A DNA stretch of 64,000 nucleotides from Pecten maximus (GCF_902652985.1 NC_047018.1:16492001-16556000); one strand, 5' to 3'. Counted from the first letter of the stretch, positions 58,123 to 61,992 are shown. Translations and numbers: made by a program. The notes: generated by a model not told the origin, from the letters alone.

Positions 58123-58653
58123 TTGGTTTGGTTTATTTTGTTTAACGTCCTATTAACAGCTAAGGTCATTTAAGGACGGCCTCCCGTGCGTGCGACATGT
58201 ATGCGTGTGGTGAGTGCGTATGTGTGTTTTGGGAGGCTGCGGTATGTTTGTGTGAAGTCTCCTTGTGGTAGGCCGGGACTTTTGCCGATTATAGTGTTAC
58301 CTCACTGGAGCATACTGCCGAAGACACCCAGCAGCACACCCCACCCGGTCACATTATACTGACAACGGGTGAACCAGTCGTCCCACTCTTAATATGCTGA
58401 GCGCTAAGCAGGAGTAGCAACTACCATTTTTAAAGACTCTGGTATGTCTCGGCCAGGGGACAGAACCCAAAGCCTTCCTCACAGGGGTGAACGCTCAACT
58501 AAAGGCCAAAAGTGAGGCATTGTCAAGGGAGACATTAGGAAGAAGAAAGTTTGTAAGAAAGAAGAGAAAAGATAATATCCCAAATTCAGTCGCCTCTTAC
58601 GATCATGTAATGGGGGCAGCAGGTACAATTTTTACGCCCTACCTACAGGGCAG
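58123..58653 (-). mobile_element. SINE with Meta-domain-like body, extended 5' head and simple-repeat tail
   Basis: Perfect 11-bp TSD CCTTGTAAAAT (58112-58122, 58654-58664). Minus-strand body aaaatggtagttgc...cttagcgctcagcat...gactggt...cagtataatgtgaccgggtgg. Tail ccgtccttaaatgacc...gttaaacaaaataaaccaaaccaa is shared with the 54303 SINE. Family name is from recognition only. Confidence 0.85.
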
Positions 58654-58680
58654 CCTTGTAAAATCACGAATATCAGAATA

Positions 58681-60160
58681 ATCATACAGCGGTTTCATCC
58701 CTCTACGATTCATCCGTGATGTCGGTGACACCGTACAGCGGTTACGTCCTTCTACGATTCGTCAGTGATGTCGGTGACACCATACAGCGGTTACGTCCTT
58801 CTACGATTCGTCAGTGATGTCTGTGACACCACATAGCTATTTTGTCCTTCTACGATTCATCAGTGACACCACACAGCTGTTTCATCCCTCTACGATCGTC
58901 AGTGATGTCTGTGACACCATACAACTATTTTGTCCTTCTACGATTCATCAGTGATGTCTGTGACACCACATAGCTATTTTGTCCTTCTACGATCATCAGT
59001 GACACCACACAGCTGTTTCATCCCTCTACGATTCATCAGTGATGTCTGTGACACCATACAACTATTTTGTCCTTCTACGATTCATCAGTGATGTCTGTGA
59101 CACCACACAGCTATTTAGTCCCTCTAGAACTCGTCAGTGATGCTAGAGGGACATCATCAAGTTAGGGGGAAACCACAAACCTTTTGAGGTATAGCTTTGT
59201 TACTTAAAATAGCCAAAATCCAATCTTTTTTTAAAATTTGTTTCGTCCAAGTCGCATATATTTAGTCACGAAAAATCATAAAAATGCAAAATAAAATTCA
59301 TTTGCACGTTGGAAAGTAAGAAAAATTAATGCAATGCTTCCGACGTAGCATCAAGTTTATAAGTAGCTAACGCTTTCAGTAAGCGTCTTTAGTAAAATAT
59401 TATTTACCTTATGAATTAAATCGCCTTTTAAATAATTTATTACAAATTTTACTGTCTAAGCGATTTTTGCTATTTTTAGTTCCAAATCTATACTTCAACT
59501 GTCGTGTGATAGGCGAGTTTACGTTTTAAGTTGGTGGTTTTTACACAAATTGATCATACAGCTGATGTTAGGGACATCATACAGCTGCTTCGCCCTCCAA
59601 GGACTCGTCAGTGACGCCAGGCACATCAAACAGCTGCTTCGCCCTCCTATGACTAGTCAGTGACATCAGGCACATCATACATCTGCTTCGTCCTTCTAGG
59701 ACTCGTCACTGATGTCAGGGACACCATACAGCTGCTTTATCCTTCTAGGACTCGCCACTGATGTCAGGGACACCATACAGCTTTGTCGTCCTTCTAGGAC
59801 TCGCCACAGATGTCAGGGACACCATACAGTTGTTTCATCCTTCTAGGACTCGTTACTGATGTCAGGGACACCATACAGCTGTTTTGTCCTTCTAGGACTC
59901 GTCACTGATGTCAGGGATCTACCATACAGCTGCTTTATACTTCTAAGACTCGTCACTGATGTCAGGGACACCATACAGCTGTGTCGTCCTTCTAGGACTC
60001 GCCACAGATGTCAGGGACACCATACAGCTGTGTCGTCCTTCTAGGACTTGTCAGTGATGTCAGGGACACCATACAGTTGTTTTGTCCTTCTAGGACTCGC
60101 CACTGATGTCAGGGACACCATACAGCTGTGCCGTCCTTCTAGGACTCGTCATTGACGCAT
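58681..60160 (-). ncRNA. Tandem array of ~22 49-nt minimal (type I-like) hammerhead ribozyme units, individually degenerate, split by a MITE
   Basis: Minus-strand consensus GACAUCA-CUGAYGA-GUCC-UAGAA-GGAC-GAAA-C-AGCU-GUA^UGGUGUC-ccu, i.e. helix I (7 bp), core box, helix II, GAAA, palindromic helix III, NUH site. Best copies 59001-59046 and 59573-59618. Confidence 0.85.
59158..59552. mobile_element. 395-bp MITE inserted in the hammerhead array
   Basis: CAA...TTG ends with long imperfect TIRs (aaaccac...gtatag...aaaatagc.aaaatc on both ends); 5-bp TSD ATCAT at 59153-59157 and 59553-59557. Confidence 0.8.
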
Positions 60161-61992
60161 GCTAGGGGTCGAAAAATGTAAATAAAATTCCAGATGGAAG
60201 TCAGTGAAATAAAAATGTACCTGAACGCTGGTGCCAATATTCATAGGTATTTCATCGCGCAATGTTAACCTCGGGGACAGTACCGGGAGGTAAGATTGCA
60301 TTGACAACACTCTCATAGAATTTTAAAACTGCAATGCGAATCAACTCGAATCCTCAGCTCACCAGAGATGAGAATGAGTTCGGTCGTTACCTATATACCT
60401 ACAATGTAAGTTGATCTGTAATATTCGCGTGAGTTCAATTTTAAAAACATAACAGGATTTAAACATTCCAAGACCACATTTCTCTTCTTCATGGGGCAGC
60501 ATCAATCAATGTGAGAGTTTCTATGAACCTTGAATTGATCAAAATGCAATCATTAGAGAGCCATTCCTCATGCTACATTACGTCTCGGATACTTGATATA
60601 TCGGTCTTAAACTGGCAAGCACATAGACAATATGTTTTATCGGTATATTTCCGAATGAGTACAATAGCTTCTAACGTCCTTCGTCTAACTTGTCTGTATG
60701 TCGATTTGACGACTTGTACTGGTCTGTATGTCGATTTGATACGGAAGCGTATAGGGGACACGACATACTTATTTATAATACATTATGTATAGTTATCATA
60801 TCCCGTTTTACACACATATTTACTGTTATCTTGAGATAGAGATGTCGACATAACATACTTTATCTTCACATTTTACAGTTAAATAATCTAACTTATACAT
60901 ATAAAGTCATCTATCTAGAGTAAACATATGTCGATATACATAATGTCATTATAAGTCCTTATAACACTATCTTGAATTATCCATATACTTAGTTATTTCA
61001 ATATCTAATTTGTTGTATTAGAGCCTTGTACTTTCACATTTTAACTTAATGTTTGTGGGTTTTTTTTATAGTTTTTTTCATATCTCAAAATACTATAACT
61101 CGTGTTTGCGAAATATATCTTTCCATCCCAAGAAAAAAAACCGGTAAGAATAAGGTATAACATTTGAACACGATTTATATTATCTCGAATTCTAAGTTTG
61201 AAAGTTCGTGTTCGACGTAGGTGTTGTTGAGATATTAACTTATACCCGGCTACATTTAGGTAAACTTCTCGACTTGGCAAGTTAAATCTTAATTGCTTAA
61301 TTGTCGTAAAACGATTTGTCTGGTTATTACAATATCTCATAATGATGTATTTCGATTTAGTACTGTTAATGTTTTCCTCTACAAAAGCACAATAAAATTA
61401 ATAATATACAAGGGCATTTGCATTGCGTTTGAAGAAGGGAGAGCTGCTACTATTGAGTGTGGACGTACAACAATAATTTTGGAATATGCTGCCACTGAAG
61501 CAGGTAAATATAATAAGCAATAATTATCATATTTTTTAAATTATCACGGCACATGATTCTGCCTTGGATAACCTCTGAACAATCTTAGAAGTTAGAGGAC
61601 CAAATTGAGACTAAACAACAGAGTTGCTGAATCATATACCGGTTTGGCCTCTTAGTTAATGGGTGAAAATGAAAAGTCGGCTAAAATAGATGGTATCATA
61701 CAAAAGACCGGCTGACTCAAGGGCAAATCTAAGACTGGGGAAAAAAGGATTTTAATGGCCGAGAGCGAAAATAACAGGGGGCGAAATTTCCTTCAATTGC
61801 ATTAAATTTATTTGTATAATCGAGAACTGCTAATGAATTATTTTCCGTAATGCATATCCAATGCATAGACATTGGTATCAATTTTAATTATTCTAAATAA
61901 AGAAAACTTACTGGAATGTTATTATAAATAATAAGAACAATAAGTGTCTTTTACCGAGATTTTGAAGTTTTCAAGAAGATCTATTGCGAAAC

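What the first reader, a model, noticed from the sequence alone, without database searches (positions are those of the whole stretch)
58681..60160. A minisatellite whose 49-bp unit is nothing but a minimal hammerhead ribozyme
Seen: on the minus strand the unit consensus reads GACAUCA CUGAYGA GUCC UAGAA GGAC GAAA C AGCU GUA^ UGGUGUC plus a 3-nt linker. All hammerhead elements are present in order: 7-bp helix I (GACAUCA/UGGUGUC or UGAUGUC), CUGANGA, helix II, GAAA, a helix III reduced to the palindrome CAGCUG, and a GUA site. Some variants keep pairing (GUCC/GGGC, AUC/GAU, GGCGUCA/UGAUGUC). Established: minimal type I hammerheads with palindromic helix III occur in Penelope-like elements and in tandem animal repeats (newt satellite 2, Schistosoma SM-alpha, non-LTR retrozymes) and cleave as dimers, but those monomers are a few hundred nt with cargo between ribozymes. 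Inference: here the monomer is the ribozyme alone, so a transcript would be cut into 49-nt pieces or circles. It could be an ultra-minimal retrozyme, an RNA-shredding transcription barrier, or a slippage-amplified ribozyme fossil. Caveat: every copy I read has at least one core deviation (59001-59046 has GUG at the site; 59573-59618 has GAAG for GAAA; many right-hand copies have GUGACGA).
Basis: partly seen in the sequence, partly recalled or inferred. Interest (0 to 1): 0.92.

Follow-up and report, generated by a model that had tools for sequence, protein, structure and literature searches.

The report
Decayed tandem array of hammerhead ribozymes
Two runs of a 49-base repeat in a scallop genome are worn-out copies of a genome-wide repeat whose unit is one self-cutting hammerhead RNA motif, multiplied inside a small mobile element: a new twist on a known kind of ribozyme-bearing repeat, and dead at this locus.

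Summary
On the minus strand, window 59570-60159 (12 units) and 58675-59144 (about 10 units) are 49-bp tandem repeats with all hammerhead elements in order.

The two arrays are separated by 425 bp, mostly an unrelated MITE-like insertion.

The locus is one member of a genome-wide family in what is evidently the king scallop assembly. An intact 32-nt core motif occurs 528 times (reversed control 0), and intact units pass Rfam Hammerhead_1 (34-42 bits).

The arrays sit exactly where a single type I hammerhead sits in a roughly 400-bp non-coding dispersed element with variable 5' starts and a constant 3' end. That pattern suggests a 5'-truncating retroposon of the retrozyme or SINE-like kind.

Genomic copies decay neutrally: core positions are no better kept than loops, there is no covariation, and 34% of units are intact against 30% expected.

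Array-private variants and higher-order periods point to growth at the DNA level. Transcription and cleavage remain unshown.

Verdict: a new variant of a known kind, and a fossil at this locus. Other first-stage readers of this scan flagged the same family elsewhere in this genome.

The parts
59570..60159 (-). Array A: 12 units of 49 bp. Each unit is a minimal hammerhead module plus a CCU linker. All 12 are core-defective, mostly C3 to G, with further G12, A13 or A14 changes. Mean divergence from the family consensus is 10.2%.
58675..59144 (-). Array B: about 10 units, two of them shortened to 39-40 bp, giving a 137-bp higher-order period. This is a more diverged variant, with helix II as AUCG.../...GGAC or AUC/GAU and the linker ACA. 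Mean divergence is 16.6%, and no unit is intact in the type I frame.
59010..59064 (-). The one junction-spanning (type III frame) hammerhead candidate with all invariant core bases. The cleavage site and helix I strand come from one unit, and both core boxes come from the next. Helix III is 7 bp and helix I is 7 bp. Helix II is only 3 bp, with A10.1-U11.1 in place of G-C, and the MFE fold prefers a register that sequesters G12 and A13.
59145..59569 (.). Spacer between the arrays. Positions 59153-59557 are an unrelated MITE-like dispersed repeat (inverted arms 59153-59220 and 59462-59557; at least 45 genomic copies at 70-79% identity). A remnant of a deleted unit lies at its array-A side.
60160..60300 (-). 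Possible eroded remnant of the carrier element's head upstream of array A. The resemblance is by eye only and nhmmer does not detect it.

Best explanation
The two arrays are old, neutrally decaying members of a genome-wide family in which the hammerhead module of a small non-coding retroposon was tandemly duplicated.

The duplicated module is 49 bp: a 45-nt type I ribozyme plus 4 nt of upstream sequence. The carrier is about 400 bp and consists of a head, one hammerhead and a tail ending in ...TGTACAATCC.

The sampled 49-bp arrays share one internal junction, so the duplicated form most likely arose once. It then spread with the carrier and changed length locally by unequal crossing-over or slippage.

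The family consensus is a textbook hammerhead. In a multimeric transcript, the palindrome CAGCUG of one unit can pair with that of the next. This gives a complete three-way junction in cis (7-bp helix III, hairpin helix I, hairpin helix II) that should cut after GUA every 49 nt.

What is shown: the anatomy, the family, the carrier context, and the neutral decay. What is inferred: retroposition of the carrier, the single origin, and any cleavage.

At this window's locus the ribozymes are dead or nearly so. The locus is a fossil with no indication of host function.
For: Family:
- BLAST of 4 units finds at least 225 matches on many chromosomes.
- The intact 32-mer occurs 528 times and a 15-mer of helix II occurs 4,435 times. 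Reversed controls give 0 and 1.
- Intact units pass the Rfam Hammerhead_1 gathering score of 34 bits: 34.2-36.5 bits in fetched loci and up to 42.1 bits genome-wide.

Carrier:
- The 5' flank recurs at about 70-80% identity, followed by a single hammerhead in at least 9 loci and by arrays in others.
- A profile HMM of the element maps head starts at positions 16 to 239 but tail ends at 401-426.
- Tail-to-head partial tandems occur in L030, L044, L047 and L060.

Single origin: all 23 array consensus sequences share the same 49-bp phase and junction.

Local growth:
- Arrays carry private variants such as CACCUG in L009, AAAGAC in L008 and GUCAUAG in L027.
- The window's array B has a 137-bp higher-order period.

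Neutral decay:
- Mismatch rates are 9.1% in the core, 7.6-10.8% in the helices, 8.5% in the linker and 4.0% in loop II. CpG transitions dominate.
- 34% of units are intact against 30% expected from independent decay.
- Helix pairing is no better than in shuffled partners, bar one pair marginally above.

Fold: the junction-spanning hammerhead structure scores -17.6 kcal/mol against an MFE of -18.5. The type I monomer fold scores -7.4 against -12.3.

Window: 0 of 22 units are intact, and the arrays are among the most diverged sampled.
Against: - No head or tail of the carrier is detectable around the window's arrays, nor around two other sampled arrays, L005 and L028. Array-only copies therefore exist, or their flanks have eroded.
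- Arrays with 51-bp and 45-bp periods exist on C1. Either the 49-bp form changed by indels or duplication happened more than once.
- The variable 5' starts come from local HMM alignments of roughly 70%-identical copies and could partly reflect lost sensitivity.
- Target-site duplications were not established.
- No autonomous partner was found. Thirty GIY-YIG (Penelope-like) loci showed neither a hammerhead nor homology to the carrier.
- Transcription and cleavage are untested. The only runs available were contigs of unknown kind.
- One junction in the window (59064-59010) is core-complete in the junction-spanning frame, so 'completely dead' is not proven.
Confidence: 0.72

Rival explanations
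1. Ultra-minimal retrozyme. Intact arrays are transcribed and cut themselves into 49-nt RNAs, which are ligated into tiny circles. Rolling-circle reverse transcription of those circles then seeds new arrays. On this view the 49-mer itself is the mobile unit, and the window holds two old insertions.
For: - Arrays lie on many chromosomes.
- Some arrays, including both in the window, have no recognisable carrier flanks.
- Intact units pass Rfam.
- Adjacent units give a near-MFE complete hammerhead in cis.
- Known retrozymes spread through circular RNAs (PMC7229834), and a preprint lists retrozyme consensus lengths down to 51 bp.
Against: - In 17 of the 22 sampled array loci the carrier's head or tail (both in 9) is recognised beside the array; aligned junctions place the array at the carrier's single-hammerhead position.
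- The first and last units grade into carrier sequence.
- Array-private variants and higher-order periods indicate growth at the DNA level.
- No RNA evidence is available.
Confidence: 0.1
2. A satellite carried by a DNA transposon. The carrier is a MITE-like or Helitron-derived non-autonomous element with an internal tandem-repeat core, as described in other bivalves (recalled from my own knowledge, not checked here). The hammerhead is mere cargo inherited from an older retroelement.
For: - The architecture is a short non-coding element with conserved flanks around a variable tandem core.
- Array size changes at the DNA level.
- No tRNA-like head was found, and no retroelement partner was found.
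Against: - Head starts are variable while the tail end is constant.
- Tail-to-head partial tandems are typical of target-primed reverse transcription, not of cut-and-paste or rolling-circle DNA transposition.
- No terminal inverted repeats of the carrier were seen in the alignments.
Confidence: 0.12
3. Host-selected function at this locus. The array acts as a transcription barrier or RNA-shredding module, or defective units complement one another to yield active ribozymes.
For: - One junction (59064-59010) is core-complete when the substrate half of one unit is combined with the enzyme half of the next.
- Rfam Hammerhead_3 aligns across unit junctions.
Against: - There is no excess conservation of core or pairing in the family.
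- The window arrays are among the most decayed and are interrupted by a transposon insertion.
- The one complete junction has a weak 3-bp helix II with A10.1-U11.1 and a competing fold.
Confidence: 0.04

Closest known systems
Non-LTR retrozymes of metazoans (Cervera and de la Pena 2020, PMC7229834), including the mussel Mytilus galloprovincialis repeats of about 350-390 bp
   Same: Both carry a type I hammerhead with a very short helix III capped by a palindromic loop. Both are non-coding, occur as tandem DNA repeats, and are present in thousands of copies in a bivalve genome. The carrier here is about 400 bp with one hammerhead, the same size class as the mussel monomer.
   Different: Here the repeated unit is 49 bp, the ribozyme alone, multiplied inside the carrier. 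Described retrozymes repeat the whole monomer, 170-400 nt in that paper. The carrier here occurs mostly as dispersed single copies with 5' truncation rather than as long monomer arrays. Circular RNAs are not shown here.
Shortest retrozyme families in Li, Clavereau and Pollet 2026 (bioRxiv 10.64898/2026.07.22.740005): consensus lengths 51-972 bp
   Same: These are tandem repeats defined by a type I hammerhead in every unit, with a lower size bound (51 bp) essentially equal to a bare ribozyme.
   Different: That survey covers vertebrates plus a few insects and one anthozoan, and does not describe the short families further. No mollusc is included, and no carrier context or junction-spanning fold is reported in the text read.
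Minimal hammerheads in pseudo-LTRs of Penelope-like elements (Cervera and de la Pena 2014, PMC4209133)
   Same: Both are minimal hammerheads expected to work only when a second copy supplies an extended helix III. They show massive genomic occurrence, low activity as single motifs, and head-to-tail partial tandems of the host element.
   Different: The PLE motifs described there have a long helix II (7-8 bp) and a short helix I (4-5 bp), and they flank a reverse transcriptase gene. Here helix I is 6-7 bp and helix II is 4-5 bp. No reverse transcriptase or GIY-YIG gene was found next to the element, and 30 PLE loci showed no homology.
Hammerhead satellites of newts (satellite 2) and Schistosoma (Sm-alpha, SINE-like)
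   Same: Each is a dispersed or tandem non-coding repeat carrying one type I hammerhead. In newts the helix III is a single base pair with a palindromic tetraloop, and cleavage needs two copies (PMC7229834).
   Different: Those monomers are about 330 bp, so the two cooperating ribozymes lie hundreds of nt apart. Here neighbouring ribozymes abut, so the double arrangement collapses into an ordinary cis type III hammerhead of about 55 nt.

Membership tests
Hammerhead ribozyme (Rfam RF00163, type I) | Invariant core CUGANGA ... GAAA ... UH in the right order | tested here: not met
   Window: 0 of 22 units are complete in the type I frame. Family elsewhere: met, with 178 of 523 sampled units complete and 528 exact intact 32-mers in the genome. 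One window junction (59064-59010) is complete in the junction-spanning frame.
Hammerhead ribozyme (Rfam RF00163, type I) | Score at or above Rfam's gathering threshold (34 bits) | tested here: not met
   The best window unit scores 24.3 bits, and the gathering-mode scan gives 0 hits. Family elsewhere: met, at 34.2-36.5 bits in L005, L007 and L020 and up to 42.1 bits genome-wide.
Hammerhead ribozyme (Rfam RF00163, type I) | Three helices around the core | tested here: met
   Helix I is 6-7 bp and helix II is 4-5 bp. Helix III is 1 bp plus an AGCU loop, or 7 bp between the palindromes of neighbouring units. The junction-spanning fold lies within 0.9 kcal/mol of the MFE for intact natural units. 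No covariation supports the helices.
Hammerhead ribozyme (Rfam RF00163, type I) | Site-specific self-cleavage after the H17 nucleotide | not testable with these tools
   This needs transcription and cleavage assays. The only sequencing runs available were contigs, which cannot show RNA ends.
Non-LTR retrozyme | Tandem DNA repeats each holding a type I hammerhead, with no coding capacity | tested here: met
   No ORF of 90 aa or more overlaps the arrays, and the 49-bp period is not a multiple of 3.
Non-LTR retrozyme | The whole monomer (ribozyme plus cargo, 170-400 nt in PMC7229834) is the tandem unit | tested here: not met
   The unit is 49 bp with no cargo. The roughly 400-bp carrier shows only partial tail-to-head tandems in 4 loci. 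A preprint does list families down to 51 bp.
Non-LTR retrozyme | Expressed as self-processed linear and circular RNAs | tested here: inconclusive
   No holder is on record as RNA. Contigs of unknown kind from two organism labels cover array A, but mostly as other family members.
Penelope-like element pseudo-LTR | Hammerhead lies in a repeat flanking a reverse transcriptase / GIY-YIG ORF, or shares sequence with such a repeat | tested here: not met
   Thirty GIY-YIG loci (each +/-1.5 kb) hold no hammerhead motif and show no homology to the carrier. This is a limited sample dominated by one PLE family, so a partner may still exist.
tRNA-derived SINE | tRNA-, 5S- or 7SL-like head | tested here: not met
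   ARAGORN finds no tRNA in 10 loci with complete heads. An Rfam E-value scan of 3 loci gives no small-RNA match.

The most novel reading that the evidence does not exclude
Intact arrays of this family elsewhere in the scallop genome are transcribed and fold co-transcriptionally into cis type III hammerheads built from neighbouring units. They release 49-nt RNAs that are ligated into circles. These would be the smallest natural ribozyme-derived circular RNAs, and a minimal retrozyme whose whole genome is its ribozyme.
Probability: 0.1. Interest if true: 0.85.

Novelty: new variant of a known kind. Interest (0 to 1): 0.42.

Why it matters
Hammerhead-bearing tandem repeats (retrozymes, newt and schistosome satellites) are known. 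The puzzle of why animal type I hammerheads have a crippled helix III is usually answered by 'they act as dimers across monomers hundreds of nt apart'.

This scallop family shows the limiting case. When the ribozyme alone is repeated, the dimer arrangement becomes an ordinary, complete cis hammerhead every 49 nt. That gives a natural substrate for testing how such ribozymes fire in multimeric transcripts, and whether a ribozyme-only RNA can circularise or be reverse-transcribed.

It also documents how a minisatellite is born from a functional module inside a mobile element and then decays neutrally.

For genome annotation, it explains roughly ten thousand repeat units in the king scallop assembly. 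That figure is a rough extrapolation. The genome paper as searched mentions neither Penelope elements nor satellites.

The window's own locus is a fossil and in itself unremarkable.

Tried and rejected
- **Rfam gathering scan of the whole window:** nothing found.
- **Link to Penelope-like elements:** I searched 30 GIY-YIG loci with strict and relaxed hammerhead descriptors and by BLAST with carrier copies. Nothing was found. The sample is small and mostly one PLE family, so this is not evidence of absence.
- **tRNA or small-RNA origin of the carrier head:** none found.
- **Selection on the ribozyme in genomic copies:** rejected. Core positions are no better conserved than the rest, there is no covariation, and the intact fraction matches independent decay.
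- **Carrier flanks around the window arrays:** not detectable by nhmmer even at E <= 10. The resemblance by eye upstream of array A is not significant.
- **Expression:** The look-up of sequencing runs returned only Logan contigs, and no holder is on record as RNA. Laying four runs showed cross-mapping contigs from other family members. These read C where the window has G at core position 3 (plus-strand C>G at 59709, 59856, 60005, 60103). No strand, ends or proof of RNA could be obtained. This gives no verdict on transcription.
- **One script timed out**, and two anchor patterns were mistyped.
- **Genome allowance:** As a result the 51-bp and 45-bp arrays, the top Rfam hits and further PLE loci could not be fetched.
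- **Literature:** searches for a hammerhead satellite in bivalves, or for a hammerhead minisatellite, found no description of this family.

Full report
**1. The observation**

Tandem Repeats Finder reports two 49-bp arrays on the window, at 58686-59142 (9.7 copies) and 59562-60155 (12.1 copies). The left array also has 88- and 137-bp higher-order periods.

I read the minus strand and cut it into units.
- a 7-nt helix I strand,
- CUGAYGA,
- a helix II hairpin (GUCC-UAGAA-GGAC),
- GAAA,
- the palindrome CAGCUG,
- UA,
- the complementary helix I strand,
- a 3-nt linker.

Unit 59046-58998 has GUG at the site, unit 59618-59570 has GAAG, and most right-hand units have GUGRCGA. None of the 22 units has all invariant core bases in this frame.

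Rfam finds nothing at gathering thresholds. In E-value mode, Hammerhead_1 (best 24.3 bits, threshold 34) and Hammerhead_3 (24.5 bits, threshold 48.5) are the top hits, all on the minus strand.

59145-59569 is a 425-bp spacer. Its positions 59153-59557 carry inverted terminal arms and have at least 45 dispersed genomic relatives at 70-79% identity. The spacer is therefore an unrelated MITE-like insertion.

**2. A genome-wide family with intact members**

The window's genome has 918,306,378 bp in 3,983 sequences. These figures equal those of the published king scallop Pecten maximus assembly (PMC7191990).

- Four units of array A find at least 225 matches on many chromosomes, from 1,259 first-look candidates.
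- An intact 32-nt motif running from CUGAYGA to GUA occurs 528 times, against 0 for the reversed control.
- A 15-mer of helix II occurs 4,435 times, against 0 and 1 for the controls.
- Extrapolating from the sampled units gives on the order of ten thousand units, which is a rough figure.

In 21 fetched arrays many units are fully intact, for example 21 of 29 in L005. Such units pass Rfam's curated Hammerhead_1 threshold: 34.2-36.5 bits in the fetched loci and up to 42.1 bits genome-wide, at 49-bp spacing.

The window's own copies remain sub-threshold.

**3. The arrays sit inside a small mobile element**

Array flanks are weakly but consistently similar between loci. The 5' flank recurs across the genome at 70-80% identity. 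In at least 9 loci it is followed by a single hammerhead, with a perfect 6-bp helix I (GCAUCA/UGAUGC), and then by the same 3' flank. In other loci an array follows instead.

I built a profile HMM from 16 single-hammerhead copies and mapped it on all loci.
- The hammerhead occupies profile positions 283-332.
- In array loci the head starts anywhere from position 16 to 239.
- The tail ends at 401-426, close to the motif ...TGTACAATCC.
- In L030, L044, L047 and L060 a partial tail lies directly upstream of a head.

Variable 5' starts, a fixed 3' end and partial head-to-tail tandems are what target-primed reverse transcription leaves. I therefore read the carrier as a roughly 400-bp non-coding, 5'-truncating retroposon of the retrozyme or SINE-like kind. 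This is an inference, because target-site duplications were not established.

The carrier has no tRNA-like head. Thirty loci with canonical C-terminal GIY-YIG endonuclease (Penelope-like elements) held no hammerhead and showed no homology to it. No autonomous partner is identified.

Around the window's arrays the head and tail are not detectable.

**4. How the arrays arose**

All 23 array consensus sequences share the same 49-bp phase and the same internal junction. The first and last units grade into carrier sequence. A single origin of the 49-bp duplication (the ribozyme plus 4 upstream nt), followed by spread with the carrier, is the most economical reading.

Arrays also carry private, array-wide variants and multi-unit periods. 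This shows local expansion and homogenisation at the DNA level.

Arrays with 51-bp and 45-bp periods exist on C1.

**5. No sign of selection on genomic copies**

Across 523 units the mean mismatch to consensus is:

| Region | Mismatch |
|---|---|
| Core positions | 9.1% |
| Helices | 7.6-10.8% |
| Linker | 8.5% |
| Loop II | 4.0% |

The worst positions are the two CpG sites inside the core.

The observed intact fraction is 34%, against 30% expected if positions decay independently. Helix pairs are paired no more often than in shuffled partners, bar one pair marginally above, and compensatory changes are almost absent.

The ribozyme was thus intact in the source copies, but the genomic copies are decaying freely. 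The window's arrays are among the most diverged sampled, at 10.2% and 16.6%.

**6. How an intact array would work (inferred)**

The type I monomer fold is poor: -7.4 kcal/mol against an MFE of -12.3, and the MFE is a competing fold.

The palindromes of neighbouring units pair over 6 bp plus A15.1-U16.1. The linker closes helix I into a hairpin. This gives an ordinary 55-nt type III hammerhead at -17.6 kcal/mol, against an MFE of -18.5. The palindrome-palindrome helix appears in the MFE of di-, tri- and tetramers.

This is the known 'double hammerhead' logic of animal type I ribozymes (PMC4209133, PMC7229834), collapsed into cis.

In this frame one window junction, 59064-59010, has every invariant core base. 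However, its helix II is 3 bp with A10.1-U11.1, and a competing register sequesters G12 and A13. Residual activity cannot be excluded but is unlikely.

**7. Expression**

Only assembled contigs of runs of unknown kind were available. They cover array A, mostly as other family members, and include a second organism label. They prove neither transcription nor cleavage.

**8. Comparison and novelty**

Hammerhead tandem repeats are known as non-LTR retrozymes, with monomers of 170-400 nt in the founding paper. These include mussel repeats of 350-390 bp. Minimal hammerheads are known from Penelope-like elements.

A 2026 preprint lists retrozyme consensus lengths from 51 to 972 bp without describing the short ones. 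I found no description of this scallop family, or of a ribozyme-only array nested in a carrier.

I class it as a new variant of a known kind, and the window's locus as a fossil. Other first-stage readers of this scan noted the same family elsewhere in this genome, and none had been followed up.

Noticed in passing
window 58400-58683: Immediately beside array B lies part of a very high-copy dispersed repeat. Contigs from all four laid runs, including a second organism label, pile up here at summed depths in the thousands and above, up to 10^5. The unique flank 60175-60500 has none.
   Followed up: no
window 59153-59557: A MITE-like element with inverted terminal arms (37 nt at 84% and 28 nt at 71% complementary) splits the two hammerhead arrays. 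It has at least 45 genomic relatives at 70-79% identity, from 222 first-look candidates.
   Followed up: partly
G000:C1:7806095-7807776 and G000:C1:32132152-32132349: These are arrays of the same hammerhead module with other periods: 51 bp (about 30 units) and 45 bp (the ribozyme with no linker).
   Followed up: no
G000:C5:20188227-20188317, C16:2053556-2053648, C10:28335782-28335874: Rfam Hammerhead_1 matches above threshold (about 38 bits) span about 92 nt rather than 44. The model appears to bridge two units, with one unit read as an insertion.
   Followed up: no
L061-L090 (G000, 30 GIY-YIG loci): At least 150 scored GIY-YIG endonuclease matches were found. Several sit at the C-terminal end of long open frames (up to 929 aa) behind a Cys-rich linker, as in canonical Penelope-like elements. 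No hammerhead motif lies within 1.5 kb in the 30 loci read.
   Followed up: partly
L016 about 2140-2200 and L052 downstream flank: Another short repeat containing the palindromic motif GAGGCCC(A/G)(A/G)GGGCCTTAACGGTC abuts two unrelated copies of the carrier. It is probably a separate common mobile element.
   Followed up: no
L035 (G000:C4:33184987-33188116): Two near-identical copies of the carrier lie 1,372 bp apart. Each has exactly two hammerhead units and a tail cut at the same profile position (374). This indicates a local segmental duplication rather than two insertions.
   Followed up: no
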